DNA of 64,000 nt, from NCBI GenBank assembly GCA_002269645.1, contig NIVC01000967.1, positions 1 to 64,000 on the forward strand, written 5' to 3'. A program made the position numbers and the translations under genes. Below the pieces are notes generated by a model. That model made no database searches. It saw only the letters and a list, made by a program, of their open reading frames with translations, and was not told where the DNA came from. This DNA comes from Macrostomum lignano. Its lineage: Eukaryota. Each line of letters opens with the position of its first letter. The first letter of the stretch is position 1. Of the stretch, positions 3,001 through 31,547 are shown piece after piece.

Positions 3001-6000
3001 TTGGCGCCACGACACCCTAATTTGGTGCCCCTTGAAACCCTAATTTGGTGCCCCTTGACACCCTAATTTGGTGCCCCTTGACACAATAAAATTGGTGACT
3101 TTTGCAGTGGCGCCACTTGAGACCCTAAAGTGCCATCTATGATGGCTTTTAGCGCCTATTTCTTCAAGTAGCGCCTTCGTGACTCTGTGATATACGCGAA
3201 TTGAGTGCCTGCTCTAACAGAATTATTGGCTTTGACAGCCAGTTACAATGACCCTCTGACCGAATCGTATAACAATGATTTAATTGCTTATGATTTTTTT
3301 AATCACTGTTCTTGCAAATATATTTGGCAAATTCTAGACTTTCTAGTGCTAACTCTTCACAAAAAAGCCGCAGGTTGGCTTTTGTTTGTTAGGCTTCATT
3401 TAAAAAATGGAAATACCAGCTGACTGACCTCGCGGCTACGCGAAGCATTGCGTACGATTCTATTTTTAGTATATGGACTAGCTCGGAAATAAGGAAAACC
3501 AGCTCGTCTTCTGTGTGTCTCTCTTTATCTCTGGTTTTAGTTGACTTGAACTTAGTCTGTCTATCTTGTATTTTCTATATACCTGCTTACGGCTGTTTTA
3601 TATTATAGGAATAGCAAAATTAATGTACTCAAAAATGACGCAACATTCTATAGTTTGTTAGGATTTTTTTCACACTTTGTAGATTTGCTCATTTTTATGT
3701 AATAGACATTTTCTCCGTTCAAGCTTGCCGCCTAACCTTTCATTGCGAAGGTATTAATTATATAAGCTACTAATAGTAGAACTAATTGCGCATTATCAAT
3801 TCCGCATTAACAATCAGGTGTCAATCAAAGGCTCCCTGTGGACAGTGGATCCCATGGCCAGGGCCGGCATGCTTCAGGCGTTAAAGAAGACGCCTTATCA
3901 TCCGTTTGCTCAGGTGCAGATGTACTGCACAGCTGGGACTCTTTATAAAACTGGCGCCAGCGGTGGCCGCGAGCGTCAGCAGCAACAGCAGCAGCAGCAG
4001 CTTCAACAGGCTGCTGGCTCTGTCGCGTCCGCCACCTCGGCTGTCCCGGCCACTACGCTGGGCCGCCTGCGCTACAGCGGCCTGCTGGGAACCGCACTGC
4101 TAGCCGCCGCCGCGGCAGCTGCCAATCCCGGCGCTACGCCATCTGGCGCCGATGCTTCGTCGCCAGCCGCTGCTGACGCTGGAGCTTGCGGTTCCGGTCA
4201 CCAGGAAGCCAGTGCCGCCGCCGCTGCTGCACCCGACGATGCTCCATCGGCGACAACATCAGCAGCGGCAACTCCAACTCCGACGCTGCATCAGTATCAT
4301 CCGCATGTTAACAGCTTCCGCGGTGTACAGACTCCTCGCGTGAAGTTGGAGCTGTTCGACCCCGCCAGCTCGGCTGCTGGTGGCACGGCTGGCGTCGCCA
4401 AGGAGGCCTCTGACGAGGACGCCTGCAACGGTGGCGTCGAGCGTCAGCAGGCGGGTCGAACTCCGCGCAAGCAGGACCTGGTGCCGTCTGCGCATCTCTA
4501 TCCGTTTCTGGCGGCTAAGATGCGACGCCTGGTGCACTTGTTAGGCGATCAGGTGAGAGTCAGCGATGCTTGTTTTATATAAGGACTTATGAGGCTATTT
4601 CGGCGGCCAGCGGGTCTGGCTTTTCAACTGTCAGGCCTGTACACGGCTATCCGTACCTGCTCAAAGATCAGCTGATTGGGCATAACTGCGGGTCCGACTG
4701 TCGTCTTAAAGGGCCTGTCAACTTGGGCTCATAAAGTGGAGCCCGAGTAACCTATGTACACAAATGATACGTCATTCTGCTCACAGTGACGCCAAGAAAC
4801 TGGGGGGGGGGCTAACAACAAGAGCATAATTAGGGACTCGACTTTAAGAGCTTAAGTCGATATAATAGTCACTAATCATCCCATTGCTTTTTCTCCCCTA
4901 TCCCAATTCTAACTCTTGTCCGTTTTTGCCGAACCCAGCTTCTTGGTGTCACTGTGAGCAAAAGACGTGTCATTTGTGTTCATAGGTTACTCGGGCTCCA
5001 CTTTATGAGCTTAAGTTGACAGGCCCTTTGGCGGCAGTGTCCAAGGCCTCCCTAGTTCGTGCATAATCCATTCATCGCATCCATTCCAATGAACGCCCCG
5101 CAGGCGTCCGACCCCGACTGTCTGCAGCACGCCGACGCCAACACCGACGACGACGACGACGAAGAGGAAGATGGCTACGTTGAAGTTGAGCAGCCAGTCA
5201 AGCGGCCGCGCGGTCGGCCTCGCAAAGACAGCGCCCCGGTGTACCGGCCGCTGCCGCTGGCCAAGTCGGCCAATCGCAGGAAGAAAAATCGTCGACTTGG
5301 TGGCGGCAAATCCTCGGGAATGCCGTCAGTCAACGAACTGGTTGCCGCCGCCCAGATGACTCAGATGAAACGAGAGGCTGCCGCCACCGCTGCCGTCGCG
5401 GCCGCTTCTGCTGGTAAGCCGAAGCCGCCAAAACTGGAGCCGGCACCGGCGCCAACATCGCTGCCAGTGTCTCCGTCTCGGCTGCAGGATGCTCAGGCTC
5501 TGTGCCTAGTGTTCAAACGGGCCGCCGACGAGGCCGCTGCCACAACCGCCGCCACCGCTGCCGCCGATTCCGCTGCCGACGCCGAACAGTGCCGCCCGAC
5601 TGAGGCAAAAATGCCCAAGCTGATTGCGGCCTCGCGTGCGGCGGCCGACTTGCAAGAGTCAGCGGCCGCGTGAGTAGTCGGGTGGGCTGGGGGCTCTCGG
5701 ATCCGCTTGCTTGGCCGGCCACCTTCACCCACATTGGCAGGTTTATTTGTCCGCCTTCACCCCACATTGGCAGGTTTATTTGGTCACCTTCACCCCACAT
5801 TGGCAGGTTTATTTGTCCGCCTTCACGAACATATTGGCACACAATTAATAGCCAACCGTTATAAAATCCCAGCAGCTCGGCAGATGGAGACGAATCGGAG
5901 GCGTCCTCCTCGGCACTGGTCCGTCTGGCGCTGAATCCGTCGGCCCTGCGTGTACCCTGCGGCCCGGTCAGCCCCACCAACTCGGAGCCCGGCTCAGCCG

Positions 6001-6320
6001 AGCAGCAGCAGCAGCAGCAGCCAGTTCCAGCTGTTGGCCAGCAGGAATCCAAGACGCGTACAATTGGCGGTGCTCGCGTCCGGGTACTTCAATCGACTAA
6101 GTCGACTGTCGCCAATACTGCGTCGCAATTTCAGCCGATGATCTCGCTGCCGAAGCTTCATCAGCAGCAGCCTCTGCTGCAGCCGCAGCCTCAGTTGCTG
6201 TTGCAGCCGTTTCTAGCCGCGGCTTCAATGCCGGCTGTTGTTGGAGCGCCAGCAGCTCCAGCATCCACTGTTGGCGGCTCGCTCTCTCATTTTATTATTA
6301 AACTGGCTGGCAATCGGTGA
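1..6320 (+). CDS. FOXN2/3: Forkhead box transcription factor FoxN2/3 (CHES1-like), 5'-partial; exons <1-584, 3818-4552, 5104-5669, 5873-6320
   Basis: Restoring five single-base deletions in exon 1 gives [64 protein letters not shown], spliced in phase 0 (GT 585, AG 3816-3817) to [23 protein letters not shown]. This matches the FoxN2/3 signature ([27 protein letters not shown]). Downstream exon phases are compatible through to TGA at 6318-6320. Confidence 0.88.
677..1005. repeat. Inverted repeat, ~64-bp arms (677-740 and 943-1005) with ~200-bp spacer, in Fox intron 1
   Basis: GAGTCAAAATTGAGCCCGAAGCATTCGGTCCCGGTTTCTCTAATCCAATACCTTCATTTGGAGC closely matches the reverse complement of 943-1005. 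Confidence 0.8.
1611..3085. repeat. Minisatellite, 21-22 bp unit GCCCCTTGACACCCTAATTTG(G), in Fox intron 1
   Basis: Directly visible tandem array of about 65-70 units. Confidence 0.95.
4710..5027. mobile_element. MITE with ~94-bp terminal inverted repeats (Kolobok/T2-like), in Fox intron 2
   Basis: Arms 4710-4803 and 4934-5027 are about 90% reverse-complementary (AGGGCCTGTCAACTT...AAGTTGACAGGCCCT). The left flank is TTAA; the right flank is degenerate (TTGG). Confidence 0.7.
5722..5830. repeat. Short ~33-bp tandem repeat (about 3 copies) in Fox intron 3
   Basis: CCTTCACCCCACATTGGCAGGTTTATTTG repeated. Confidence 0.85.
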
Positions 6321-6889
6321 TCAAGACCGTCAACCTGAACATGAATATGAACAAACGCTGGTATATTTCTATAAATAGCCCACGGGAATCCCCGCAGTCT
6401 TAATTTAGAAGCGAATCCTTTCTCTCTTGTTAGTATATGCGTAAACCACGTTGGATTTTTGTTGGGGCTGCGAGCATATATTCTGGCAGTAGTTATTTCT
6501 CTTTTTTTGCGCACAACATTGCAGCAATATATTGTGTATATCTGTGTAATATGTGCGCGACAGGCATCTCATTTGCGTCTACAAGCAATTGTTTCTATCT
6601 GTACTACATATATGCCATTTTGTGCGCGCCCAGCGCTGCATACTGAGAACAGTTTGTGAATTTCTTGACGCTTCTATCATTGTTAAATTACGCATTAAGT
6701 TGCCCTGGTATTCAATCTCTGTGTGTGATTGCAATTTTTATCCAGTTCAGCTAGCTATTCTGTCAGCAGGACTTATTCGGTTCAATATTGATGTAGTTGC
6801 ACATGATATTCTCTCTCAGTAAATACTTTTTTGTCCACCCTCCCAAATTGCTCTCTAGCCCATTATTTTTCCAAAAATCCGCAAAATTA

Positions 6890-7320
6890 TTACCGTGTAG
6901 AAACCGGGCCTATCACAATGTAGAAACCGGCCCAATACAGTGTAGAAACCGGCATATTACCGTGTAGAAACCGGGCCTATCACAATGTAGAAACCGGCCC
7001 AATACAGTGTAGAAACCGGCATATTACCGTGTAGAAACCGGGCCTATCACAATGTAGAAACCGGCCCAATACAGTGCAGAAACCGGCATATTACCGTGTA
7101 GAAACCGGGCCTATCACAATGTAGAAACCGGCCCAATACAGTGTAGAAACCGGCATATTACCGTGTAGAAACCGGGCCTATCACAATGTAGAAACCGGCC
7201 CAATACAGTGTAGAAACCGGCATATTACCGTGTAGAAACCGGCATATTACCGTGTAGAAACCGGTATATTACCGTGTAGAAACCGGCATATTACCGTGTA
7301 GAAACCAGGCCATTGCTCGT
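6890..7320. repeat. Higher-order minisatellite: 67-bp unit built from three GTAGAAACCGG-containing subunits
   Basis: GTGTAGAAACCGGGCC recurs at 6895, 6962 and 7029 (period 67). Confidence 0.9.
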
Positions 7321-8199
7321 ACAATGTAGAAATAGGCCCATCGCCATGTAGAAATCGTAAGCAGTAATTCTGTTGCTATGCGAGAAGGAACTCAGCTGTT
7401 TCTAATAAGTAATAAGTTAGCTCAGTTCAAGTCATCATTGTGCATACCAATGAAACTATTGTATTCAGAGCTCAGTCAGTCATGTAAATAAATCATTACT
7501 AAAAACAGTGTGTTTAATACAAGCTATAGTCTTCAGTTGTTACTATGAGTAATCTAATGCATAGCAACTATCTATGCAATGCATCATATTAATCTCTCTC
7601 TCTCTCTCTCCTTGTCTCTTGCATTTTGTGGCCCATTGTATTCTAGTTTATTCTAGGCTTTGCTTGGCAATCGGTTTATAATCTTATTAATTAAATATAA
7701 TAGTTTCGTAAGTCTTATTGGTATTGCTCCATTTCGCACGCTTCATAGCTGCGGTGCAATCTGTTTAATAAATTTAAGTATACAATTATCATATCTATAT
7801 TATATATACCATTAAATGCAGTCATTTTTTCGCTGAAATAATTCAAAATCCTTGCCCATCTGGTCGCTCTGTCTCTGTCTGTCTGTTTTATCTTCTTGTA
7901 TTTATTTACAGATATATACACATCTATTCATTTATCTGCATTGTTGTTTTCTTCTCATTTACGCTCGACAGTTTATACAGACGCTTCTCCGTATATGCAT
8001 ATTTGATAATAAGCAACCATGCACACTATAGATTGATGGCTTATGAGTATTCAACTAATTTTATTGTGTTATTTCTATCATGGTTTACTGCTTATGTATT
8101 GCTAAACATTTCATGTTTGCTTTTCCATGCTTTTTCATTGAAGCCAGTTTTTGACGTGTAAGACTTGTGCAAATAGTTACGATTATATAATTGCTTGTA

Positions 8200-8785
8200 G
8201 GGGCGCCACAATGGGTGTGTCAGTAGCGCACCACAATTGGTGTGTCAGTGGCGCCAAGTATGGTTGTTATTAGCACCCAAAGCGGCCTTATTAGCGTTAA
8301 ACGGGTGTTATTAGCGTCTATTATGGGTGCAATTAGCGTTTAATATGGGTGTCATTAGAGCCTAATATGGATACCATTAGCGTCTAATATTGATACCATT
8401 AGCGCCTAATATGGATGTCATTAGCGTCTAATATGGATTCCATCAGCGCCTAATATGGGTGTCATTAGCGTCTAATATGGATTCCATTAGCGCCTAATAT
8501 GGGTGTCATTAGCGTCTAATATTGATTCCATTAGCGCCTAATATGGGTGTCATTAGCGCCTAATATGGATACCATCAGCGCCTAATATGGATACCATTAG
8601 CGTCTAATATGGGTGTCATTGACGTCTAGTATGGGTGTTATTAGCGTCTAATATAGGTGTCATTGGCGTCTAATCTGGGTGTCATTGGCGTCTAATATGA
8701 ATACCATTAGCGCCTAATATGGGTGTCATTGGCGTCTAATATGGATTCCATTAGCGCCTAATATTAGTGTCATTAGCGCCTAATG
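8200..8785. repeat. Minisatellite, 22-bp unit ATTAGCGCCTAATATGGGTGTC
   Basis: Visible array; ATTAGCG recurs at 8464, 8486 and 8508. Confidence 0.9.
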
Positions 8786-10099
8786 TGAGGCTCAATTATT
8801 GGCTTCGATTTAGTAGTGGAATCGCACCACCTCCCACTCCCAGTTCATGACGCGCGAATTTCATATCGAAGCGGAACTCAATTATTGTTTTGCATTGTCC
8901 ACACTAATATTTTGTTATTATTTATCTAACGCAGCAGGGGTCTTCCGCGTTCGTTTTTATTATGAAAGAAAGAATTATGTTTTTTGTGCTTATTCCCCTT
9001 TCCCTGGTGAAAGCATTCAGCAGGTATTCATTTTTCTGGTTATGGTTTGCCAAGCAATACAGTTTGTTGTGGTTTTTGTTGCAATCTTAACCCTACAATC
9101 AGTTTTCCTGTGCGAGTATTATTGTTATATTATTTATTATTATTATTATTGCTGCTAATTGTCATATTTTGCTATTTTATAATTATTTTTAATGCAAGAC
9201 AATTTTGCTCTGGAGTTTATCCAACTATCCTGTTGCACACAGGCTTAGGCGGTACTACCATTAGTATTTACATTGTCTTGCTATATTTGCTACAACCTCT
9301 TTTGTCTTCATTTCAGAATCAGTTTTTATTCTCCTCCAGCTCCGCTTCCTAAGATTCTTCTTGTATTAAGTAGAGCGGCGAGGATGAAGTTATTATTTTT
9401 TGAGAAATTATCGAGTTTCTAACGAATATAACGAATTTCATTGGTTTAAATCCAGCAGTTATTGGCGTGTGAATTTAAAAAAGTAATGTTTTCCCCAGGT
9501 TGTAGACATGAATTTGTATGTTTTCTTTTCTTTGTCTCTTTTTGAGCTTCTTCATTCACTGTCAAATTGTGAAAGCTTGCCGTCAGAGTCTGTTTTAAAA
9601 CCAAGCTGTATAGTCGGAATTATTTATGCATGCGCTGTAATTTGCTTGGCGTATTGAGTTAGACTAGGCCCAGTATGGTAGTCGCATCGGTCTGTGTTGT
9701 AATCATTTTAGTATATTAATCCTAGGATTGCACACACTTATACTGTTATTTTTTAGAGAATATTTGCGCTAATGAGCACTATCAGTGGTCACGAGTGATT
9801 TGTCACAGACATTTTTATTATTATTAATGCCGTGTCCATCAGGGGTTGTTGGCTTACAATAAATATTATATGAGCTATATGCACCTTTTTGCTCGCTTGT
9901 TTGCTAATTTTGTTCATTATAATTGAAATATATATATATATATATTAATACACTTTAAAGCACATTGTAAAAGGCTTACCCTAACACCATGATACATTTT
10001 TCCCTGGCACTAAAAATAGCGCTGAAAATGTCAGACTTTTCATTATTTATTTGTGCATATTTTCATCTATTTAGTACTTAGAGGTAAATGAATTTCCCC

Positions 10100-10742
10100 A
10101 GTTCCCCATTGAGTCTGTGGGGATATTCTAGGCCTCCAGTTTCCGATTGAGTCTGTGGGGATATTCTAGTGCCTCCAGTTCCCGATTGAGTCCGTGAGGG
10201 ATATTCTAGTGCCTCCAGTTCCCGATTGAGTCTGTGGGGATATTTTAGTGCCTCCAGTTCCCGATTGAGTCCGTGAGGGATATTCTAGTGCCTCCAGTTC
10301 CCGATTGAGTCTGTGGGATATTTTAGTGCCTCCAGTTCCCGATTGAGTCCGTGAGGGATATTCTAGTGCCTCCAGTTCCCGATTGAGTCTGTGGGGATAT
10401 TCTAGTGCCTCCAGTTCCCGATTGAGTCTGTGGGGATATTCTAGTGCCTCCAGTTCCCGATTGAGTCCGTGAGGGATATTCTAGTGCCTCCAGTTCCCGA
10501 TTTAGTCCGTGAGGGATATTCTAGTGCCTCCAGTTCCCGATTGAGTCTGTGGGGATATTTTAGTGCCTCCAGTTCCCGATTGAGTCTGTGGGGATATTCT
10601 AGTGCCTCCAGTTCCCGATTTAGTCCGTGAGGGATATTCTAGTGCCTCCAGTTCCCGCTTAAGTCTGTGGGGATATTTTAGTGCCTCCAGTTCCCGATTG
10701 AGTCTGTGGGGATATTTTAGTGCCTCCAGTTCCCCATTGAGT
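10100..10742. repeat. Minisatellite, 39-bp unit CCTCCAGTTCCCGATTGAGTCTGTGGGGATATTCTAGTG, just upstream of the FLCN acceptor
   Basis: About 16 copies, ending ~45 bp before the AG at 10787-10788. Confidence 0.95.
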
Positions 10743-10788
10743 CTGAATCCATCCCTCGATGCGTCCCCCGCACCCCTAACCCTCTCAG

Positions 10789-13700
10789 AACTGCCTAGTG
10801 GCGCTGACCCACTTCTGCGAGGACCACGGGCCCTCGGTGGTGATGTGCACCCAGGCGGTGAGGCTGTCCGGCTTGCCGGTAGCCAAAGGCGGCAGCTGCT
10901 TGGACGGCGCAACAATCAGCTCGGCGCTGCCAGGCGGTCCGGCCAGTCTGACTTCAACGAAATGCCCGGCTTGCCGCTCGATGCCGCCCAACACCTTGGC
11001 AATGTACACAGCCGACTGGCAGGGCGACTTGCTGCTTGTGTCCAGCCAGCACCCAGCCGCTCCCAATCAGTTATATAGCCAGCTGCGTCAGGCCTGCCTT
11101 CGTGTGCACTCGTGCGAAGTCTGTCCAACCGGAGCTATGTACTTTGGCGACGATGCCGGCGGCGGCGGCGGCGGCGGCGGCTGCCACGTGTTCGCCAGTC
11201 CGTTCCAGCTAGACGACGTGAAAGCTCGCGGCCTGTCTAGCCAGTTCTCTGTGCTGGCGCTGTCGCGCGACGGTCGAATGCTGCTGCAATCCTGGCCTTG
11301 GCTGGTCAACCGCTCGGCCGAGATCATTGCCGGCCTGCGCGACGCCGCCGCAGCCCAGTTCTCAGCTGAGCAATCGGCCGGCTGTTCGGCTAGGGCTGCG
11401 CGAATCAACGGGTCCGGCTGGGTTCGAATGCGCCGGTCTGACGTGCCGACCAGGTCGCTGGCCCAGCTGACTAGCGATCCAAGCGTCTATAGGCGGTTGC
11501 ACACCTGCTTTGCCCGACTGTTGCGCGGCTGGCAACGGGAAGAGCTGGCGCCTGGCAGGCCTACCGAGGATCAGCTGGCTTTGGACTCGGTGCTGTGCCT
11601 GGCTGAGGAGGTGAGAGTGTGTGAGAGTGCTCGTGAGGACTAACCGGTCTGACCTGTCCTAAAGAATCGCCTCTGAGCTGCCCTTAGAAATTGCCTATGA
11701 GCTGCCCTTAGAAATTGCCTATGAGCTGCCCTAAGAATCGCCTCTGAGCTGTCATAAAGAATCGACGTTGAGTCTCCCTAAAAAAACAAACACCATCCCT
11801 GAGTCTCTAACACCATCCCTGAGTCTCTAACACAATCCTGAGTCTCTAACACCATCCCTGAGTCTCTAACACCATCTTCGAGTCTCTAACACAACCCTTG
11901 AGTCTCTAACACCATATTCGAGTATCTAATACCATCCTTGAGTCTCTAACACTATCTTCGAGTTTCTAACACCTTCCTTGAGTCTCTAACACCATCTTCG
12001 AGTCTCTAACACAATCCTTGAGTCTCTAACACCATCTTCGAGTCTCTAACACAACCCTTGAGTCTCTAACACTATCTTCGAGTTTCTAACACCTTCCTTG
12101 AGTCTCTAACACCATCTTCGAGTCTCTAACACAATCCTTGAGTCTCTAATACCATCGTCGACTCTCCCCTAAGGATTGTTCTTAAGCCGCCCCAAAAAAT
12201 GACTCTTTAAAATCGCTCTTTTCAATGCACTTGTAAGCATCTAAAGCTGGTTTTCACACACCAATAAGAAATAATCGTAGTTAATAAAAAAACAACCGTC
12301 TCAGGACGAAGACTCCGCAGATGACGGCATTCGCACTGTGGTTCCCACACCCACAAAACTTGTCGGAGGAGGCGGCGGCGGCGGCAGCAGCGGTCTAGGT
12401 GGGGAAGGCGTCCAGCTCCCGGTTGTGAGCGCAGTATTTCACTCTCTGCGCCACCTGCGCGAGCGTTTGCACCAGGCGCCGCCAGCTTGTCAGTCGATTG
12501 ATAATTTTAGTCTGCTGCTGCATCACCTGCTCACAGGCAATCAGATCGTGTTTCGAACTTCGCTGCCTGAACTGGCTAAATCATTTTTCACTTTGCTGCG
12601 TTGCCTACTGCCTAGCAACTGTTCTCAGGAGCTGCTCAACTGGCAACGATATGAGGAACCCTATAGGTGAGTGGGATTCTTGTAAGTTTAGATTGTGTAG
12701 GTCTTTGATCGCTGTGACATTATCAGGCCTGACTGTCTAATCGTCAGGCATGTGTACTCTCTGTGTCTTTGTGGTTGAATGTTCAATCCCGCTGAAAACG
12801 TCACCGAGACAAGAATCGCTAGAGTCATTGCAAACAACTCACTCAGTGACTCTAGCGTCTCTTGGGGCGACTCTTGTGGCTTTTTAACGACTCAAACAAC
12901 TGCAATGCGACGGAGAGGCGACTGTTGAGTCACGAGCGCATCGCGTGAGTTGCAGAGTCGTAATTAAAGAGTCGCGAAAGAAGTCGTTCAAGAGCCGTTG
13001 TGTTTGCGCTTAACTTTCTACTAACATAAGTAGACTAAATAGAGTTGTGTTATAAATGCGAAATGCGATTCTAATTCATTAAGTGACCAGATGCGCTTTA
13101 GACGCAACTCAGTGATTCTGCAGCGGCTCTGGCACGCCTCAGATACGACTCTACGGACTTCCTAATAGTCCGTCCTAGTTAGCATTTTATTATACGAATG
13201 GACCTTATTGAAAGTGTCTGGCTGCAATGGGTTATTTAACGGTCAGTTTCTATCATGCTGCATCATCAAACCAGGTGCAACCTGTTAGGCCTGACTGCCG
13301 ATACTCGCCTACCAGATTGGATCGCCGCCGACGGCGAGGGCCATCCAATGCTACTGCTGGACTGTCGGCCTGACGCGTCAGCGCTTGCTGCACAGGTAAG
13401 CTCTGGCTGGGCTTGTGCGTGTGCGTGAGTGTTGGTTGATGAGTGCTCCCTGGCGCTTATGTACCAGTACCTGGGTGATATAGCACTAACTGAAGCTGGG
13501 AGCAAGCAATTCAATCCTTTCGATGGAGAATCAAGCTATTGATAAAACTAAAGATAAAGCTCTCCTCACTAAATTCCTCGTCTGCCATATCCGGGTTTTT
13601 CTGATGAAATCTGTGGTTGCTCCATTGAACCATCTTTTGGACCATGGACAATGAAAAACAAGTCTTTAATAGCTGGATTCTCCCAGTGAGGGTTGAATTG

Positions 13701-15979
13701 ACTGCTACTAAGGCTCAATTGGCTTCGAAAAATGCTACATTAATTTGGGGACAAGCTGGCATTGTCGTGTGATTCACGACCATTAGGGCCAACCTCAAGG
13801 CACAGAGAGTGTACATGCTTTGAAGTCCGTGATGCAGTGACAGTTTGGCAAGAAACTTTAAAAGAGATAAACAACCTATCCATTAGTGTTGTTTTTAGTT
13901 AACATAGCGCCAAGTGAGGATTTTCCATAGACATTACCAGCGGACAAGCTGCCGTCATGGAGGAAACATGAAACAAGAGAAAAGGTTATCTATGTTAATA
14001 CTACAGCCTAGCATGCGCGTTAATCGTGAATTTCCCCCGCGTACAAGCTTCAGCCATTAAGAAATTAGGGGGGGGGCTATTATTAAATTCAAGCAGCCAA
14101 TGAAATTCATGGAAGGGATATCCCTATTTTTAGGAAGTCTTGGCCATAGACTCGCTTTCAGATGAGCGATCCTTTCTATTCCTTCATCCATGGCTGCCGT
14201 GCACACAGATTCAATTCACCCCTAGATGGGCCACTCAAGGCCGCAGTGCGAAAACCCCGGGGTTCAAGCCATAGACTGTAGCTTCTTTTGCGGTCAAGCA
14301 TTACCAGCAGCAGCTGGTGTCTGTGGCCCAAACCCTGGGTTTCCGTGACCTCGGAGAGGGCCGCTAAATACATTAGCGAATGCTGGAGCGACAGCTAAGT
14401 CTAATATAGAATCTGTAGCCGTGCATTTTCGTACTTCGTTTGAAGTCTTGACTTATCAGCGTATCATACACACTTCCGGCGGCTTATTTATTGTTTTATT
14501 AATGTATAACAAATAAAAGTTCCTACTTTGTTAGTAGTATGCATTTACCAACCCCAAAATACGCAACAAACATTGCAACAGGCTTTCATACCCGTAGACG
14601 ATCTGGATCTAGTAGTGACAACCAATAGGCCTGCCCGGCCGGCCGCTCAGCTGATTGGCCAAATTGACTCCCTGCTGGGCGATCCGGTGCTGCCTGAAGA
14701 GTCTCTCGATCTACTTCTGGCCAATGCTAAAGAGGATTGGCTAGAACGGGCTAGACAAACCTACGCTTTTATGCAGGTGAATATTTGTTTGATTGTGTAC
14801 TTTGGTGTCTGCCTAATCTGATAATTGGCAGTGGCTACTTCAAGTTAAATTTATTGATTGTCGCTATAAAGCGCGCCAATATCAGTGTAAGGAGCGCCAA
14901 TATAAGTGTAAGGAGCGCCAATATCAGTGCAAGGAGCGCCAATATCAGTGCAAGGAGCGCCAATATCAGTACAAAGGAGCGCCGATATCAGAACAAGGAG
15001 CGCCAATGTCAGTACAAAGGAGCGCCGATATCAGAACAAGGAGCGCCAATATCAACAGTAGGGGCGTCAATATCAGTAAGATTAGCGCCAATATCAGTAC
15101 AAGGGGCGCCAATATCAGTACAAGGGGCGCCCATATCACTACAGGAGCGCTAATATCAGTACAAGGGGCGCCAATATCAGTACAAGGGGCGCCAATATCA
15201 GTACAAGGGGCGCCAATATTAGTACAAGGGGCGCCAATATCAGTACAAGGGGCGCCAATATCAGTACAAGGGGCGCCAATATCAGTACAAGGGGCGCCAA
15301 TAGCAGTACAAGGGGCGCCAATATCAGTACAAGGGGCGCCCATATCACTACAGGAGCGCTAATATCAGTACAAGGGGCGCCAATATCAGTACAAGGGGCG
15401 CCCATATCACTACAGGAGCGCTAATATCAGTACAAGGGGCGCCAATATCAGTACAAGGGGCGCCAATATCAGTACAAGGGGCGCCAATATCAGTACAAGG
15501 GGCGCCAATATTAGTACAAAGGGCGCCAATATCAGTACAAGGGGCGCCCATATCACTACAGGAGCGCTAATATCAGTACAAGGGGCGCCAATATCAGTAC
15601 AAGGGGCGCCAATATCAGTACAAGGGGCGCCAATATCAGTACAAGGGGCGCCAATAGCAGTACCACCAGTAGCTCAGCGGGTCAAAAATTGTTCAAATCA
15701 GTTTTTAGATTGATCAAACCGATTGTAAAGCCGTAATTTGAAACGGCCTTAAGCCTTGCTGACACTACTATTAGTAGTTTAATCTAAAGGTAATTTGTTC
15801 ATAAATTGTGTCAAAAATGCAATTCGCAGGCGCACAGGCGGCAGTTCTCCGATGGCCAAGTGACCGCCTTTCTGTCCTCTCTAGGCTGTCAACGAGCCGA
15901 CGAGATTGTACTGAAATTCTGGACTCGCGGTATCAGCGGATTAACCCGTAGAGAGATTATCAAATCGTGCAGGCAATAG
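10789..15979 (+). CDS. FLCN: Folliculin; exons 10789-11610, 12305-12666, 13275-13395, 14582-14776, 15830-15979; initiator ATG not found in the genomic exon
   Basis: N-terminus NCLVALTHFCEDHGPSVVMCTQ resembles human [23 protein letters not shown]. It has CPACRS, then YEEPYR|CNLLGL across a phase-2 junction (human YEEAYRCNFLGL), and C-terminal LKFWTRG (human LKFWMTG). All junctions are GT-AG and phase-consistent. Confidence 0.92.
11665..12160. repeat. Minisatellites (24-bp, then 20-bp unit GAGTCTCTAACACCATCCTT) in FLCN intron
   Basis: Visible tandem arrays. Confidence 0.9.
12788..13156 (+). mobile_element. Partial copy of a non-autonomous DNA transposon (CCCG terminus, many GAGTC/GACTC subterminal motifs)
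   Basis: About 370 bp that are near-identical to the reverse complement of 25959-26329; begins CCCGCTGAAAACGTC. Confidence 0.75.
14872..15660. repeat. Minisatellite, 21-bp unit GCGCCAATATCAGTACAAGGG, in the last FLCN intron
   Basis: TACAAGGGG recurs at 15181, 15202 and 15223. Confidence 0.95.
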
Positions 15980-16188
15980 AAATTGCTGCCCTATGCTTGG
16001 CAGTTGGTTTTATATGTTTTGTCCATTGACGTTTTTTAGTTTTGTTTCAGTTGTTTAAATACTGGCTCGTTACTCTTTAGAGTAAATAATATCAAACATT
16101 TAGGAATTAGTTCTATTGTTGTGAATTAGAAATCTGCGTCTCCTTTGCTTATGCAAATCTTGTACACATTGCGCTAAATGCGTACACT

Positions 16189-16840
16189 GGTCCTTCAGCG
16201 GGTGGTTGCTGCTAGCCATTGGTCCTTCAGCGGGTGGTTGCTGCTAGCCATTGGTCCTTCAGCGGGTGGTTGCTGCTAGCCATTGGTCCTTCAGCGGGTG
16301 GTTGCTGCTAGCCATTGGTCCTTCAGCGGGTGGTTGCTGCTAGCCATTGGTCCTTCAGCGGGTGGTTGCTGCTAGCCATTGGTCCTTCAGCGGGTGGTTG
16401 CTGCTAGCCATTGGTCCTTCAGCGGGTGGTTTCTGCTAGCCATTGGTCCTTCAGCGGGTGGTTTCTGCTAGCCATTGGTCCTTCAGCGGGTGGTTTCTGC
16501 TAGCCATTGGTCCTTCAGCGGGTGGTTGCTGCTAGCCATTGGTCCTTCAGCGGGTGGTTGCTGCTAGCCATTGGTCCTTCAGCGGGTGGTTTCTGCTAGC
16601 CATTGGTCCTTCAGCGGGTGGTTGCTGCTAGCCATTGGTCCTTCAGCGGGTGGTTGCTGCTAGCCATTGGTCCTTCAGCGGGTGGTTGCTGCTAGCCATT
16701 GGTCCTTCAGCGGGTGGTTGCTGCTAGCCACTGGTCCTTCAGCGGGTGGTTTCTGCTAGCCATTGGTCCTTCAGCGGGTGGTTGCTGCTAGCCATTGGTC
16801 CTTCAGCGGGTGGTGCTGCTACCCATTGGTCCTTCAGCGA
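16189..16840. repeat. Minisatellite, 32-bp unit GGTCCTTCAGCGGGTGGTTGCTGCTAGCCATT
   Basis: About 20 near-identical copies downstream of FLCN. Confidence 0.95.
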
Positions 16841-17654: not shown

Positions 17655-17996
<342 letters not shown>

Positions 17997-18120: not shown

Positions 18121-18876
18121 ATGAATTCGCACGCCCAGCAGGCGGCGCCCTATCACGAGCGCCAGCGACTATTATTATGCGCGGTGCACGCGGCTAATAA
18201 TCTTCTGCAACGGCCAGAGTTCACTCAGAGCCAGTTTGACCAGCTGTGCCAGTCTTTGTCGCCGCAACAGGTCAGGTTATTAGCTTGCTTATCGCCCTTA
18301 CTGACTCAGGTTACCGTGTGCACTGCTTAGATACCTATCTATGCCTACATGGGTCACTAACCTATGCTCATTCAATATCCTTTAATATAATATCATTATT
18401 AAAAGTACACCCGTCGCCGGGCCCGCTATCTCTCCCGACAGACCTGGCTGCTAAATCCTCATCGGAATCCCCTCGGCCTTGGCAACTACGACGCTAACGT
18501 GTTGGACGCCGCCTTGCAGAGCCGCGGCCTTCGCCTAGTCTGGTTCGACCGGCGCAAACCGGTCGCCTGCCTGCTGCCCGACAGAATCGAAGGCTTCCTA
18601 ATCAATTACCAATCGGCTGCCTGCTCCGTGCTGCCGATAATCCGCTCCCGCCATTGGGTGGCGCTCCGGCGCTGCGGCCCGAACAATGAGTATCATAATC
18701 TGGATTCCAAAATGGCCGAGCCCAGCCTCATTGGTTCAGGACAGCCTGCCGATCTGCTGCACTATCTGCAGGCCAGGCTGGATGCCGACGCCAGTCTGCA
18801 GATTCTCCCGGTTGTACTGCCCGAGGTGGCCGACTCTGGCGACTGGCAGCTGGCGCAACCGGCGTCTGATGAATGA
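18121..18876 (+). CDS. JOSD: Josephin-domain deubiquitinase (JOSD1/2-like); exons 18121-18270, 18442-18876
   Basis: YHERQRLLLCAVHAANN, LGNYDANVL, RHWVAL and YHNLDSK match Josephin motifs. The Cys-His-Asp catalytic triad is present, and the GT-AG intron is phase 0. Confidence 0.93.
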
Positions 18877-18981: not shown

Positions 18982-19452
18982 AGTAGATTGTAAAAATATT
19001 GTTGAGTAGATTGTAGAGATTGTTGAATAGATTGTACGGAGATTGTTGAGTAGATTGTACGGAGATTGTTGAGTAGATTGTACGGAGATTGTTGAATAGA
19101 TTGTACGGAGATTGTTGAGTAGATTGCAGGTAAGATTGTTGAGTAGATTGTAGAGATTGTTGAATAGATTGTACGGAGATTGTTGAGTAGATTGTACGGA
19201 GATTGTTGAGTAGATTGTACGGAGATTGTTGAATAGATTGTACGGAGATTGTTGAGTAGATTGCAGGTAGATTGTTGAGTAGATTGCAGGTAGATTGTTG
19301 AATAGATTGTACGGAGATTGTTGAGTAGATTGTAGGGAGATTGTTGAGTAGATTGTAGGGATATTGTTGAGTAGATTGTAGGGATATTGTTGAGTAGATT
19401 GTAGCGAAGATTGTTGAGTAGATTGCAGGTAAGATTGTTGAGTAGATTGTGA
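18982..19452. repeat. Minisatellite, ~23-bp unit GATTGTTGAGTAGATTGTACGGA
   Basis: Visible array just after the JOSD stop codon. Confidence 0.93.
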
Positions 19453-19487: not shown

Positions 19488-19939
19488 CGCATTAGGCGCA
19501 CGTTTGGGAATCTGGCAGCGGAGGCAGATTGAGGCGGGAGCGCGATTAATGTACCTAATGAGCTAATGGGAGCTAGATGAAGGTACCTAATGAGCCAATG
19601 GGAGCTAGATTAGTGTACTTAACTAGCTAATGGAGGTCATTTCAGCTAGATTAGTGTACCTACATGTAACTAGCTAATGGGGGTCATTTCAGTTTGATTA
19701 GTGTACCTAACTAGCTAATGGGGGTCATTTCAGCTAGATTAGTTTACCTAACTAGCTAATGGGGGTCATTTCAGCTAGATTAGTATACCTAACTAGCTAA
19801 TGGGGGTCATTTCAGCTAGATTAGTGTACCTAACTAGCTAATGGGGTCATTTCAGCTAGATTAGTGTACCTAACTAGCTAATGGGGGTCATTTCAGCTAG
19901 ATTAGTGTACCTAACTAGCTAATGGGGGTCATTTCAGCT
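19488..19939 (-). repeat. Inverted duplicate of the 3' end of XYLT intron 1 plus 24 nt of exon 2
   Basis: The reverse complement matches about 23090-23559: ~8 units of the 41-bp satellite, the unique acceptor region and ATTCCCAAACGTGCGCCTAATGCG. Confidence 0.9.
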
Positions 19940-21462: not shown

Positions 21463-24400
21463 ATGAGCGGCTCAAAACGCAGGCATCTTGGCCTACTATT
21501 AGTAGCAGCACTAGCGTCTGTCGTCTGTCTCTGCTTACTCGGCCATTTAAACTGGTTATTTAATTCGGACAGAGCCGCCGGACAGCCGCTGGCCGAATGG
21601 GAGCGCCTGCCGGATGGACCGGAGTCGCCAGACGATGGCTGCAGGCTCCGCTCCGAGCGGGCGCGCTATGCCGTTGACAGGGCAGCTCAGCCCGAGTGCC
21701 GGCGTCGGCTGCTGCGCGTCGCTTGCGCCTTCGAGTCTGGCCGGCTGCCATACCGGCTGCGGCATGTCGGACAGGCCTGTCCGGCTAGACTACTGTCCGG
21801 CTCTGGCCCGGCCACTTCCTGTCACAGCCTGCTACAGTCGGACAGTTGTCCGTATCCGCGCGAAGTGATTCCGTCGGCCAGTTGGACGAACAATATGCCG
21901 GCAGAGAGCCGGCGAGGCGAATGCTTGGCCAGATGTCGCTCGGCCGGCTATCGGCTGGCTAGCATTAGCAACCGGGACTGCGTCTGTCTTCAGTTGCTAG
22001 GCAACGGTTGCAGCCGACCTGCTATTGGCTATAATTGCACAGGTGCTTCGATTAGAGATGGTTACTATCTGGTTAGCCAAACCGGGCTCAATGCTAGCTC
22101 TTTGTTTGTGTCTCATACCGCACCTGCCTACGGTCCCGAGTTCGAATCCTATAGCTGGGAGAACGATCGAGTTCGATTAGTCTACCTGATGACGCTCAGC
22201 GGTAGAGGTGTGCGACAGGTAATGCGGCTGTTATCGGCTGTGTACTATGTTAATCATTATTACTATATACATGTGGACTCTAGAGACGATTTCCTGTACG
22301 AGTCGCTGATGCCGCTGGTAGCCAGGTGAGCACTGTTTGATTGATCTTAGGGTTCTAGGTAGGTAGGTAATAGGGTATCATCGGAACCTACCTACCCCAG
22401 TAGCTCATTAGGTACATTAATTTACGAGCTCCCATGACCCCATTGGCTAGTTAGGTACACTAATCTAGCTGAAATGACCCCCATTAGCTAGTTAGGTACA
22501 CTAATCTAGCTGAAATGACCCCATTGGCTAGTTAGGTACACTAATCTAGCTGAAATGACCCCCATTAGCTAGTTAGGTACACTAATCTAGCTGAAATGAC
22601 CCCCATTAGCTAGTTAGGTACACTAATCTAGCTGAAATGACCCCATTAGCTAGTTAGGTACACTAATCTAGCTAAATTGACCTCCATTAGCTAGTTAGGT
22701 ACACTAATCTAGCTGAAATGACCCCATTAGCTAGTTAGGTACACTAATCTAGCTGAAATGACCCCCATTAGCTAGTTAGGTACACTAATCTAGCTGAAAT
22801 GACCCCATTAGCTAGTTAGGTACACTAATCTAGCTGAAATGACCCCCATTAGCTAGTTAGGTACACTAATCTAGCTGAAATGACCCCCATTAGCTAGTTA
22901 GGTACACTAATCTAGCTGAAATGACCCCATTAGCTAGTTAGGTACACTAATCTAGCTGAAATGACCCCATTAGCTAGTTAGGTACACTAATCTAGCTGAA
23001 ATGACCCCCATTAGCTAGTTAGGTACACTAATCTAGCTGAAATGACCCCATTAGCTAGTTAGGTACACTATTCTAGCTGAAATGACCCCATTAGCTAGTT
23101 AAGTACACTAATCTAGCTGAAATGACCCCCATTAGCTAGTTAGGTACACTAATCTAGCTGAAATGACCCCCATTAGCTAGTTAGGTACACTAATCTAGCT
23201 GAAATGACCCCATTAGCTAGTTAAGTACACTAATCTAGCTGAAATGACCCCCATTAGCTAGTTAGGTACACTAATCTAGCTGAAATGACCCCATTAGCTA
23301 GTTAAGTACACTAATCTAGCTGAAATGACCCCCATTAGCTAGTTAAGTACACTAATCTAGCTGAAATGACCCCCATTAGCTAGTTAGGTACACTAATCTA
23401 GCTGAAATGACCCCCATTAGCTAGTTAGGTACACTAATCTAGCTCTCATTGGCTCATTAGGTACCTTCATCTAGCTCCCATTAGCTCATTAGGTACATTA
23501 ATCGCGCTCCCGCCTCAATCTGCCTCCGCTGCCAGATTCCCAAACGTGCGCCTAATGCGCCGCCGCTTCCCCACCATCTGGGGCGGCACAGGCCTCCTGG
23601 ATCTGATGCTGGCAGCATTTCGCGACCTGCTCAACTGCACCGATTGGCACTGGGATTTCGTAATCAACCTGAGCGAGTCGGATTTCCCTATTAGGCCGGA
23701 TCGGCAGTTGACCGCCTACCTGACCGAGATGAGGCATCTCAGCTTCTTGGCCTCGCACTCAGGAAACTACAGCGATTTCATGCGCAAGCAAGCTATTGAG
23801 CGCTACTTTGTACAGTGCGACAATCATATGTACTTTCTGGGCAGCCGGCAGCCAATAGAAGGCCTGCTGTTCGACGGCGGCTCTGATTGGCTGACGTTAA
23901 ATAGAGAATTTGTACAGTTTGTTATCAGCGGACTGGATAATAACCACACTATTGTGACCAATATTGTAGAGTATTTTAAATACGGCCTGCTACCAGGTTT
24001 GTAAAACTGTTTCTGTTATCAATCTCTTTGTGTGATGTTTTGTATTTATAGTATTCTGAAGTTGCTGGGATAAATCATCTGATCCTTTAAAGGCCCCAAA
24101 TTATAGGGGTAAATATCCCCAAGTACCTGTGTTTTAGGACACGTTTTAGAATAAAAAAATCCTCACGTGTATACGAGTAATCCAGATCCCAATGTCCCGG
24201 TATCTTCAAATCGAAATCCCAACTCTGGGATTTTATAGCCGAAATCCCCACTCAGTTTGAGATCCCTAATCCAGGGATTTTATAGCTGAAATCCTCACCC
24301 AGATTGAGATCCCAAATCCTCACCCAGATTTTAGAGCCGAAATCCTCACCCAGATTGAGATCCCAAAATCCAGGGATTTTAGAGCCAAAATCCTCACCCA

Positions 24401-27400
24401 GTTTGAGATCCCAATTCCAGGGATTTTAGAACCGAAACCCTCACATGTATATGAGTAGTCGAGATCCCATGTCCCGGTATCTTCAAATCGAAATCCCATT
24501 CTGCGATCCCTAAGGGCCTGTATTTCATAACCGAAATCCTTGGATTTGGGATCAAGATCCTCAAGTTCCAGCAGTACAGCAGCACGGCCCAACCAATCCA
24601 AACCCGCAGTGGAGTCTGTGTTCCACACCATCGCCCAGAACACTGAGCTATGCGGCCGGGTTGCCAACGCCAACCTCCGCTTGGTTAATTGGGACCGGAA
24701 GCGCGGCTGCCGGTGCCAGCACCTGCCGGTGGCTGACTGGTGCGGCTGCAGTCCCATGGTCTACCGGGGCGCCGAGGCTGCCGCCTACGCCAGCAGCAGC
24801 GGCAGCGGTGGTCACGGCGCTTTCTTTGCCAGAAAATTCGACCCAACAATCAGCGTGTCGGCTGTCGATGCCGCCTACGCCGAATTGATGAAGCAGCGGC
24901 ACGGAGGAGCCGCTGGCCGGGAGATGCGCGCCAAGCTCGGCCGGCCGCGCTACTGGCTCAGCGCGTTCACAGCTGGGGCGCCAGGCCTGACGCCGGTGCA
25001 GAGCGCCTTTGGCCGACTGTTGACTCGGCTGCTCTGCGCCGAACTGCTGTCCGGCACGTGTCCGGCTGGCTTCGATCCCGACAGTGTGCGCGCTGTTGAA
25101 GTGACCGAGTTCTACCTGGAGGACGCGTTCCAGGGTCCCTTGCTGACCGCCTCGATTGGCGGCGGTGTCGGCGGCGGCGGCGGCACCAACGCGGCGATGC
25201 TCCTAGACGCGCACTTCAGCCTGCAGTCTGGCATCGGATCCGGCCAAGCTGTCCGGATTGTCCACCCCAAGCAGCAACCGCATGGCAACGCGTCATCTTC
25301 GACGTCGGCCTACCAGTCTGTGATTGCCGCCAGGTTTATGGAGTTCGAGGTGAATTGCAGCGAATGCCCGATGAAAATGGTTCCTAGGTCAAGAAGCGTC
25401 CCAAGGGGGGGGGGGCGTAGCCCAGCGGTAGCGCAGCTGCTCTGGTGTGCCAGCGACCCAGGCTCGATTCCAAGTGCAGTCACATTAATTTGGGGCTGAA
25501 TTGGAATCTCGGCTTGGCTCTGCTCGTGCAATTAACGGCCTTGAGAGCCAACCCCCCAAGGCGCAGTGAAGTGTACATGCCTAACGATAAATAAAGTTAG
25601 GGCCGCTGTACACTCCTGTGTGAGTGTGTGCCTGCGTACGTATCCGCGCTTGTGTGCCTGCTCAGGGGAGTCGGCGGAATGGGCAGTAATGCCTCTCGCC
25701 GGTTGCGTGCCTATGTCGCTTAAAGTGCGCCAGGGTGCACACAACCCCCCTGCCTCTAATAAAAAAAAGAAGCGTCCCAGAGTCACTTGCGTCACCGCAA
25801 AGTCGTTAGAAGAGACTCAAGATGACTCTAAAACGGAGAGTTCACTGTTACAAATTGCCAAAAACTTGTCAAAGTGTCGCCTAAAAGTCTCATTTTGAGG
25901 CGTTGTATTGTCTGAAACTATATAACAACTCTGGGGGGCCTCTATAATGACCCTGGGGCCGTAGAGTCGTATCTGAGGCGTGCCAGAGCCGCTGCAGAAT
26001 CACTGAGTTGCGTCTAAAGCGCATCTGGTCACTTAATGAATTAGAATCGCATTTCGCATTTATAACACAACTCTATTTAGTCTACTTATGTTAGTAGAAA
26101 GTTAAGCGCCAACACAACGGCTCTTGAACGACTTCTTTCGCGACTCTTTAATTACGACTCTGCAAATCACACGATGCGCTCGTGACTCAACAGTCGCCTC
26201 TCCGTCGCATTGCAGTCGTTTGAGTCGTTAAAAAGTCACAAGAGTCGCCCCAAGAGTCGCTAGAGTCACTGAGTGAGTTGTTTGCAATCACTCTTTAGCG
26301 ATTCTTGTCTCGGTGACGTTTTCAACGGGATAAATTGTGCGTTTTAATAGACCGTATGAGTATAGTGAGTGACCAGCTACTTGAAAGGCATTCTTTAGTT
26401 GGAGCAAGTTCTCAACCAGAGACCAAAATAGTTTTTGCTGTAAAGCTTGGGGGAATGCTCACAATAAACTTCTCTGTTTATTGATGCAGACCATGCAGGG
26501 AATCTTTAAGACTTATTGTTCCTGGTGCAAAATGGTTGCTAACCATTCTAAATGCGCTTAATTGAACTGTTGAGCATCCTTGATCGGCCTTCGAAACACC
26601 TGTCTTCAGTTTGCATAGACCACAATATCTTGGCCTCTATTCACATTCGTAATCTATTGTAGTTTTAGTTCTTTTGAGGGAAAATTGGCCTTCAAAACTT
26701 TTCTTGAGTCTCGCATGATTCTTATTCGACAGGTTGGCCGCCAATATGATTGGAAAGAGGACCTCTTCCGGGACCGCTTGTCCCTGCTGGCCGCCGGCCG
26801 GGCCGCCGACTCCGGCCTGCAGCTGCGCTACGCCTGGGGCCCGGGGCCGGCCGTGACGGCCACCTTCCTGCTGCTGGACCCGGACGGCGCTATCCGATCG
26901 GCTTTCCAGCTCAGCGTCCCGGAACTGCTACTGGCTGAGGATTCAACAGCCAAGGAGGTCGGCTGCACCGATCTGCAGGCACCCGGCAGTCTGGAGCCCG
27001 GCGTCTGGCGCCTGCTGCTTCTTGATGAACAGCAGCCGCTTTCGGTCGGATCCGCCGTAGCTGAGTCCGAGTTCATCCTGTTGCCAACCGGTTCCGATGC
27101 CCATAGCAACCAGCTAGTGAAGCCGGATCCTAATTCGCCACAATACCTGGCCCTGTTCAAAGCCGTACCCGCCGCGTCCATTGCTCAGCTTCGATTAGCT
27201 AATAGAAATCCGGCCGAATCCGCCGCGGCCAATCCGGACATCCGGCTGGCTGTCCGGCTGCTGTCCAGGCGCTACAGATTGGAGACCGTCTGCCGGCACT
27301 CGGACAGTTCGGACAGTGCGGCCGCCTCTTCAGCCGCTTGTCCGGGAATTGTTGGCCTGACTGATTCGTGCTCTGGTTCGGACTGGAGCACCCGGTATGC

Positions 27401-28545: not shown

Positions 28546-28609
28546 GTTCCTGGCACTGTACAGCCATCTCAGCCGTCTGCCCACTCCAGCGGGTGCGCTG
28601 CTCTCCAAG

Positions 28610-31462: not shown

Positions 31463-31497
<35 letters not shown>

Positions 31498-31502
31498 GAG
31501 AC

Positions 31503-31547
<45 letters not shown>

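What the first reader, a model, noticed from the sequence alone, without database searches (positions are those of the whole stretch)
10777..10830. Folliculin may take its initiator methionine from a trans-spliced leader
Seen: the exon starts at a clean acceptor (CCCTCTCAG|AAC TGC CTA GTG GCG CTG ACC CAC TTC TGC) and encodes NCLVALTHFC, which aligns with residue 2 onward of FLCN (MNAIVALCHFC). An in-frame TAA at 10777-10779 blocks upstream extension. The best nearby cis donor (GAG|GTAAAT, 10083/10084) has an in-frame TAG and no ATG. So exactly one AUG in phase 0 is missing. Known: flatworm spliced leaders end in a conserved AUG that can act as the start codon. Inference: translation of this conserved mTORC1/AMPK-pathway regulator would depend on SL trans-splicing.
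Basis: partly seen in the sequence, partly recalled or inferred. Interest (0 to 1): 0.8.

Follow-up and report, generated by a model that had tools for sequence, protein, structure and literature searches.

The report
Flatworm folliculin start codon from spliced leader
The folliculin gene of the flatworm Macrostomum lignano lacks its own start codon and almost certainly takes it from the ATG that ends this species' trans-spliced leader, a mechanism known in flatworms since 2006.

Summary
The window is Macrostomum lignano (assembly Mlig_3_7, contig NIVC01000967.1). It carries an intact five-exon folliculin (FLCN) gene. Exon 1 begins at a CAG acceptor (10788|10789) with the codon for residue 2, and an in-frame TAA lies 12 nt upstream. 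The first genomic in-frame ATG is 18 codons further in.

- The M. lignano spliced leader is 35 nt and ends in ATG.
- About 45% of its human-conserved genes are trans-spliced.
- Joining the leader to 10789 in silico gives a 550-aa ORF starting MNCLVALTHFCE, in the register seen in most homologues.
- All three genomic copies share the acceptor, are under purifying selection, and are annotated as 5'-partial proteins starting 0-9 nt after the acceptor. The annotation pipeline trims the leader before mapping.

A start at the internal ATG would remove five of the seven invariant residues of the family.

Leader-supplied start codons are documented in Schistosoma and Echinococcus and noted for Macrostomum. 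This is a new example of a known mechanism and an annotation fix, not a discovery.

The parts
10760..10788 (+). 3' splice acceptor region, proposed as the trans-splice acceptor: a pyrimidine-rich tract (tgcgtcccccgcacccctaaccctctcag) ending in CAG. It contains a CTAAC branch-point-like motif at 10776-10780.
   Evidence: Read directly. It is identical in all three genomic copies.
10777..10779 (+). In-frame TAA that blocks any upstream extension of the exon-1 reading frame.
   Evidence: It is conserved in L003 and L004.
10789..11610 (+). FLCN exon 1 (274 codons, phase 0). It starts with the codon for residue 2 (Asn) and encodes the longin domain.
   Evidence: Gene model; Pfam PF11704; alignments to human FLCN; AlphaFold model with beta-strand 1 at residues 2-10, pLDDT 94.
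10843..10845 (+). First genome-encoded in-frame ATG (residue 20 of the full protein). It is the rival start site.
   Evidence: Starting here gives 531 aa and removes the invariant residues F9, C10, H13, G14 and P15.
12305..12666 (+). FLCN exon 2.
   Evidence: Canonical AG|...|GT boundaries. The spliced product matches PAA74221.1 and A0A1I8HPQ5 at 100%.
13275..13395 (+). FLCN exon 3.
14582..14776 (+). FLCN exon 4.
15830..15979 (+). FLCN exon 5, with stop codon TAG at 15977-15979.
   Evidence: The annotated CDS ends at 15979.
10098..10745 (+). 39-bp minisatellite (16.5 copies) inside the presumed outron. It ends 43 nt before the acceptor, and its copy number varies between the three gene copies.
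   Evidence: TRF; blastn between copies.
6321..10788 (+). Region between the stop of the upstream forkhead gene and the acceptor, presumed to hold the 3'UTR, promoter and outron. It contains no ATG followed by a GTRAG donor.
   Evidence: The limits of the outron were not determined.

Best explanation
The window holds one of three near-identical copies of the Macrostomum lignano folliculin gene. Its pre-mRNA is trans-spliced at the CAG acceptor at 10788|10789 to the species' 35-nt spliced leader. The last three bases of that leader are AUG. This AUG is the only AUG in the leader and the first in the mature mRNA. It lies directly in frame before AAC (Asn2), so it serves as the initiator codon for a 550-aa full-length folliculin, MNCLVALTHFCE...

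Shown here: species identity; gene structure; absence of a genomic start codon; frame compatibility with the published leader; purifying selection on all copies; and that the N-terminal 18 residues are essential for the fold.

Inferred: that the leader is actually joined at this acceptor, and that its AUG is the one used.
For: 1. **Species and contig.** A 100% match to PAA74221.1 [Macrostomum lignano] lies on NIVC01000967.1, and window coordinates equal record coordinates.
2. **Leader.** The M. lignano spliced leader ends in ATG. 30% of genes, and 45.3% of human-conserved genes, are trans-spliced (PMC8629364).
3. **In-silico join.** Leader plus spliced CDS gives the first AUG at nt 33 and an ORF of 550 aa.
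4. **N-terminal register.** It is exactly that of the family: 84 of 113 homologues with the motif, and alignment to human M1/N2.
5. **Annotations.** All are 5'-partial and Met-less, and start at the acceptor or just after it. PAA61881.1, A0A1I8GVS3 and A0A1I8HPQ5 start at +0, PAA74221.1 at +6 and PAA63135.1 at +9. The Mlig_3_7 pipeline trims the leader from reads and transcripts. It cuts genes (.g1.g2.g3) out of transcriptional units at leader-read peaks and poly(A) sites (PMC5730564), which explains a lost ATG.
6. **No cis alternative.** There is no ATG|GTRAG in 6300-10788. There are only four ATG|GT sites, all scoring 5/9 or less against the donor consensus. The 9675 candidate has lost its GT in copy L004.
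7. **The gene is functional.** All three copies are intact, with pN/pS about 0.21-0.22.
8. **The N-terminus is needed.** Residues 1-18 hold 5 of the 7 invariant family positions and form strand 1 and part of strand 2 of the longin domain.
9. **Precedent.** Use of the leader AUG as initiator is documented in S. mansoni, S. japonicum and E. granulosus (PMC9851317; PMC3510090). The Macrostomum leader ATG is described as a likely start codon (PMC10468722).
Against: - No leader-containing read, cDNA or peptide for this gene was seen. Exact M+FLCN sequences are not in the 15-billion-protein collection, and the homology search returned no M. lignano sequences.
- The annotated CDS starts are ragged (+0, +6, +9), not all exactly at the acceptor.
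- The acceptor CTCTCAG does not fit the top trans-acceptor motif [T/C]TNCAG exactly.
- Flatworm acceptors are often shared between cis- and trans-splicing (PMC12582326), so a cis-spliced isoform may coexist.
- The leader AUG has a T at position -3, a weak context.
Confidence: 0.82

Rival explanations
1. A cis-spliced 5' exon in the roughly 4.4 kb upstream region ends in ATG, or carries an ATG plus a short N-terminal extension, and is spliced to 10789. The annotations simply missed it.
For: Four ATG|GT sites exist upstream, at 8080, 8260, 9042 and 9675. Flatworm acceptors can serve both cis- and trans-splicing. A relative of unknown species (L001) has an intron acceptor 5 nt before its own ATG, so an intron at this position is old.
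Against: All four donors are poor (GTTTAC, GTTGTT, GTTTGC, GTAGTC; 5/9 or less), whereas 65% of M. lignano donors are GT[GA]AG. No donor scoring 7/9 or more has an in-frame ATG without a stop. The 9675 site lost its GT in L004, although that copy is intact and constrained. The GenBank CDSs for all three copies and the two UniProt entries attach no upstream exon.
Confidence: 0.08
2. Translation starts inside exon 1, either at the first genomic ATG (10843, giving 531 aa) or at a near-cognate codon such as GTG at 10798. This would produce an N-terminally shortened folliculin, whether or not the mRNA is trans-spliced.
For: The ATG at 10843 is in frame with a purine at -3 (GTGATGT). Leaky scanning past a leader AUG close to the cap is conceivable.
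Against: The skipped residues include the invariant F9, C10, H13, G14 and P15 and the near-invariant H8, as well as strand 1 of the longin domain at pLDDT 94. Their codons match the family consensus from residue 2 on, which is not expected of an untranslated leader. If the leader is added, its AUG comes first and is in frame.
Confidence: 0.06
3. The copy is a decaying pseudogene, or the missing ATG is an assembly or annotation artefact.
For: M. lignano is a hidden polyploid with redundant gene copies (PMC10468722). All GenBank entries are flagged partial.
Against: Three independent contigs carry the identical acceptor, TAA and exon start. All three ORFs are intact with canonical splice sites. 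pN/pS is about 0.2, while flanking DNA is only 92-94% identical. There are no Ns in the window.
Confidence: 0.03

Closest known systems
Flatworm mRNAs that use the spliced leader's 3'-terminal AUG as initiator methionine (Cheng, Cohen, Ndegwa & Davis 2006, J Biol Chem 281:733). Later examples are known in Echinococcus granulosus and S. japonicum. These are the 'slORFs' of slORFfinder.
   Same: The leader ends in AUG. The acceptor abuts codon 2 of a conserved protein. No genomic in-frame AUG precedes the conserved N-terminus. The leader AUG restores the orthologous N-terminus exactly.
   Different: The published examples come from parasitic flatworms and rest on cDNA and translation evidence. 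Here the species is the free-living, early-branching M. lignano, the gene is folliculin, and the evidence is genomic plus annotation only. I found no paper that names FLCN among such genes: 'folliculin' has 0 hits in PMC12582326, and the Mlig gene ids are not in searchable text.
Macrostomum lignano SL trans-splicing as annotated in Mlig_3_7 with the TBONE pipeline (Wudarski et al. 2017; Ustyantsev & Berezikov 2021).
   Same: It is the same genome and the same 35-nt leader. The gene is named as the third gene cut from a transcriptional unit (Mlig000131.g3). It is conserved with human, and 45% of such genes are trans-spliced.
   Different: Those papers do not analyse use of the leader ATG as a start codon. 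Leader trimming removes that ATG, so such genes appear as 'partial' proteins in GenBank and UniProt.
Folliculin (human FLCN, PDB 6ulg/6nzd; yeast Lst7), the GTPase-activating partner of RagC/D in nutrient sensing.
   Same: Longin plus DENN architecture (PF11704, PF16692), the conserved HFCE.HGP and CxxC motifs, and a full-length alignment to human FLCN.
   Different: In vertebrates and in most homologues examined, the Met is encoded in the gene. The M. lignano protein has Gly- and Ala-rich inserts and only about 35% identity.

Membership tests
Flatworm SL-AUG-initiated mRNAs (Cheng et al. 2006 type) | The organism has an SL RNA whose leader ends in AUG immediately before the GU donor. | tested here: met
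   Species identified as M. lignano. The published leader ...TTGCATG is followed by GTAAG (PMC8629364). The SL RNA gene itself is not in the window or the loci held.
Flatworm SL-AUG-initiated mRNAs (Cheng et al. 2006 type) | The first genome-encoded exon begins at a 3' splice acceptor with no credible cis donor partner upstream. | tested here: met
   CAG acceptor with a pyrimidine tract. No ATG-bearing donor scores 7/9 or more upstream. The annotated transcripts start at the acceptor with no upstream exon.
Flatworm SL-AUG-initiated mRNAs (Cheng et al. 2006 type) | The leader AUG is in frame with the main ORF, and no genomic in-frame AUG precedes the conserved N-terminus. | tested here: met
   TAA at 10777-9 with no ATG before 10843. 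Leader plus CDS gives a 550-aa ORF from the leader AUG.
Flatworm SL-AUG-initiated mRNAs (Cheng et al. 2006 type) | cDNA or RNA-seq reads show the leader joined to this acceptor. | not testable with these tools
   No M. lignano RNA data could be reached. The supplements held do not list the gene.
Flatworm SL-AUG-initiated mRNAs (Cheng et al. 2006 type) | Translation actually initiates at the leader AUG (reporter, ribosome profiling or N-terminal peptide). | not testable with these tools
   This needs an experiment.
Folliculin (FLCN/Lst7) | N-terminal longin domain (PF11704) followed by a C-terminal DENN domain (PF16692). | tested here: met
   PF11704 at E = 1.6e-30. PF16692 is precomputed for the annotated product. 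Human FLCN in PDB matches at E = 9.6e-39. The model has mean pLDDT 82.7.
Folliculin (FLCN/Lst7) | Conserved N-terminal HFCE.HGP motif and a downstream CxxC. | tested here: met
   F9, C10, H13, G14 and P15 are invariant, and H8, C59 and C62 are at least 90% conserved, across 47 homologues.

The most novel reading that the evidence does not exclude
The acceptor at 10789 may be shared between trans-splicing and cis-splicing or non-splicing. In that case full-length folliculin would be made only from trans-spliced mRNA, and trans-splicing efficiency would act as an on/off gate on a nutrient-sensing (Rag GTPase/mTORC1) regulator. The same logic could apply to a large hidden class of M. lignano 'partial' proteins that are really complete apart from a leader-encoded Met.
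Probability: 0.15. Interest if true: 0.45.

Novelty: new member of a known kind. Interest (0 to 1): 0.25.

Why it matters
**Annotation.** The GenBank and UniProt folliculin entries of M. lignano (PAA74221.1, PAA61881.1, PAA63135.1, A0A1I8HPQ5, A0A1I8GVS3) are labelled partial. They are probably complete except for a Met that is not in the genome. The same trimming artefact may affect many genes of this model flatworm.

**Experiments.** Anyone designing transgenes, knock-ins or expression constructs for this gene must add an ATG. A reporter driven by this upstream region would report on trans-splicing.

**Biology.** This would extend leader-supplied initiation from parasitic flatworms to an early-branching free-living flatworm, for a conserved growth regulator. 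It does not reveal a new mechanism.

Tried and rejected
- **Rfam on the whole window:** no hit at gathering thresholds.
- **SL RNA gene:** searches for the M. lignano leader or its 3' half plus donor in the window, L001, L003 and L004 found nothing.
- **Homology searches:** two homologous-protein searches with the N-terminal region returned no M. lignano sequence. They gave only one distant relative (P0001) or nothing, so no transcript-derived protein could be reached.
- **Exact look-up:** M+FLCN for all three copies, and the Met20-start form, are not in the collection.
- **Supplements:** the three Macrostomum papers either hold no supplement text or do not mention the gene ids or FLCN. A text search for Mlig000131 gave 0 papers.
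- **Cheng et al. 2006:** the paper is not held, so it is cited only through papers that describe it.
- **Acceptor motif:** comparison with [T/C]TNCAG was uninformative, with one mismatch.
- **Pseudogene idea:** rejected on pN/pS.

Full report
**1. What is in the sequence**

Reading 8900-11500 and translating from 10777 confirms each sequence fact in the finding.
- A pyrimidine-rich tract ends in CAG at 10786-10788.
- The next base, 10789, opens AAC TGC CTA GTG GCG CTG ACC CAC TTC TGC, which encodes NCLVALTHFC.
- TAA at 10777-10779 is in the same frame, and there is no ATG between it and the exon.
- The nearest good-looking donor upstream, GAG|GTAAAT at 10083/10084, is preceded by an in-frame TAG at 10072-10074.

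The exon-1 product matches Pfam Folliculin (PF11704, E = 1.6e-30) and human FLCN in the PDB (6ulg, E = 9.6e-39). In tblastn, human residue 2 aligns to base 10789.

I built the whole gene: exons 10789-11610, 12305-12666, 13275-13395, 14582-14776 and 15830-15979. All have AG|...|GT boundaries, and together they encode 549 aa without a Met.

**2. Which organism**

A full HMMER scan of 1.84 billion representative proteins found one 100% match, P0002. It is GenBank PAA74221.1, [quoted passage not shown]. It is encoded on NIVC01000967.1 of assembly GCA_002269645.1, at the same coordinates as in the window. So the window is the free-living flatworm M. lignano, assembly Mlig_3_7.

Two more genomic copies exist, L003 on NIVC01001989.1 and L004 on NIVC01001868.1. 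Both show the same gene order: forkhead, FLCN, Josephin, xylosyltransferase. This fits the known hidden polyploidy of the species (PMC10468722).

**3. Is exactly one codon missing?**

I examined 148 homologues. Of these, 113 start with Met and carry the HFCE-type motif. In 84 of the 113, the Met sits exactly eight residues before the motif, and 60 of those 84 have Asn as residue 2. In the M. lignano exon the motif is at index 7. The genomic exon therefore starts precisely at residue 2 of the family.

**4. Is the N-terminus translated and needed?**

In an alignment of 47 full-length homologues, seven columns are invariant. Five of them (F9, C10, H13, G14, P15) lie in the first 18 residues, and H8 is at least 90% conserved. 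An AlphaFold model (mean pLDDT 82.7) puts residues 2-10 in strand 1 and residues 14-25 in strand 2 of the longin domain, with pLDDT 94.

The first genomic in-frame ATG, at 10843, would delete all of this. The three copies are intact. They differ mostly at synonymous sites (pN/pS 0.21-0.22), while the flanking DNA is only about 92-94% identical. The gene is therefore functional and its N-terminal codons are under constraint.

**5. Where the Met can come from**

The published M. lignano spliced leader is CGGTCTCTTACTGCGAAGACTCAATTTATTGCATG. It is followed by a GTAAG donor in the SL RNA gene. 30% of genes, and 45.3% of genes conserved with human, receive it (PMC8629364).

I joined this leader to the spliced CDS in silico. 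The only ATG in the leader, at nt 33-35, becomes the first AUG of the mRNA, in frame, and gives a 550-aa protein starting MNCLVALTHFCE.

Use of the terminal leader AUG as initiator was shown for flatworms by Cheng et al. 2006. I could not read that paper, but several held papers describe it.
- More than 40 S. mansoni cDNAs require this AUG (PMC9851317).
- All flatworm leaders share it (PMC12582326).
- Use of the leader AUG is conserved among neodermatans (PMC3510090).

**6. Indirect transcript evidence**

All available annotations of this gene lack a Met and carry no upstream exon. The GenBank entries are flagged partial.
- PAA61881.1, A0A1I8GVS3 and A0A1I8HPQ5 start exactly at Asn, at the acceptor.
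- PAA74221.1 starts 6 nt further in.
- PAA63135.1 starts 9 nt further in.

The Mlig_3_7 pipeline trimmed leader sequence from the de novo transcripts and from reads before mapping. It then cut transcriptional units into genes (.g1.g2.g3) at leader-read peaks and poly(A) sites, and called ORFs with TransDecoder (PMC5730564). A gene whose ATG lies in the leader would come out of that pipeline exactly as seen: a 5'-partial ORF beginning at the acceptor. Had a cis exon been spliced to 10789, the mapped transcripts should have included it.

**7. Cis alternatives**

Between the forkhead stop (6318-6320) and the acceptor there is no ATG followed by GTRAG. Only four ATG|GT sites occur, at 8080, 8260, 9042 and 9675. 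Their donors score 5/9 or less against the consensus. No donor scoring 7/9 or more has an open in-frame ATG behind it.

Yet that copy is intact and constrained. The other three sites are conserved, but so is everything around them, so this says nothing either way.

**8. What is missing**

I could not see a single RNA read. The homology search returned no M. lignano sequences. The exact M+FLCN sequences are absent from the protein collection. The supplements held do not list the gene. The SL RNA gene is not in the window or the loci.

The ragged annotated starts (+0, +6, +9) are unexplained. They may reflect end-to-end read mapping near a junction that reads cannot cross.

Flatworm acceptors are often used in both cis and trans, so a non-productive cis-spliced isoform cannot be excluded.

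**9. Verdict**

It is a further example of a mechanism known for twenty years and already suspected in this genus. Its value is practical. It marks several database entries as complete rather than partial. It points to a probable class of such entries in M. lignano. It also tells experimenters that this gene's start codon is not in the genome.

A relative of unknown species (L001) has its own ATG 5 nt after an acceptor. This suggests the intron or outron boundary just before the start codon is old, and that the genomic ATG was lost in the Macrostomum lineage once the leader supplied one. That last step is inference.

Noticed in passing
window 10098-10745; L003 8754-9934; L004 9296-9925: A 39-bp minisatellite ends 43 nt before the FLCN acceptor. 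Its length differs between the three gene copies: about 16.5, about 30 and about 16 units.
   Followed up: partly
window 11157-11181: (CGG)8 encodes a Gly8 run in a low-confidence loop of the longin domain (residues 124-127, pLDDT below 50). The two other copies have Gly6.
   Followed up: partly
window 10776-10780: The in-frame TAA is part of CTAAC, a branch-point-like motif. It lies only about 9 nt from the AG, unusually close if it is the real branch site.
   Followed up: no
window 10789-10800; L003 10001; L004 9992-10001: The annotated GenBank CDS starts are ragged (+6, +0 and +9 nt from the same acceptor), and all are flagged partial. The UniProt entries start at +0. This is probably a side effect of leader trimming and end-to-end read mapping.
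   Followed up: partly
L001 300-330: An FLCN relative from Logan run ERR14224704 (organism unknown, 38% identical) has a genomic ATG 5 nt after an acceptor (tttttcag|ATGCAATGAAC). A two-codon ORF, ATG-CAA-TGA, overlaps the real start.
   Followed up: no
window 9660-9690 versus L004 8830-8850: Copy L004 carries a 28-nt deletion and a 1-nt deletion that turns ATGGTAGTC into ATGTAGTC.
   Followed up: yes
window 8290-8784, 11789-12166, 14873-15663, 16188-16839, 17655-17996, 18982-19450, 19603-19939: Introns and intergenic DNA are filled with minisatellites of 20-44 bp units. Examples are a 98%-identical 32-bp x 20 array and a (TAC)114 run. Exons are about 55-60% GC against about 36-45% in the spacers.
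   Followed up: no
window ~60170-61590: A strongly purine-skewed, low-complexity block (GC skew 0.65, AT skew 0.61). It reads as Glu/Arg/Gly-rich repeats on one strand and Ser/Leu/Pro-rich repeats on the other.
   Followed up: no
window 3758-6320, 18121-18876, 21463-27455, 28541-39900, 41979-44099, 55871-57782 (-), 61708-62061 (-): Neighbouring genes are forkhead, Josephin, xylosyltransferase/Branch, TAF2-like, a GPCR, a PH-domain protein and a peroxiredoxin-5-like protein. Of those whose starts I looked at, Josephin (ATG at 18121), xylosyltransferase, TAF2-like, the GPCR and peroxiredoxin-5-like show a genomic Met at or near the start of the ORF, unlike FLCN; only Josephin's was checked against an annotated CDS start.
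   Followed up: partly
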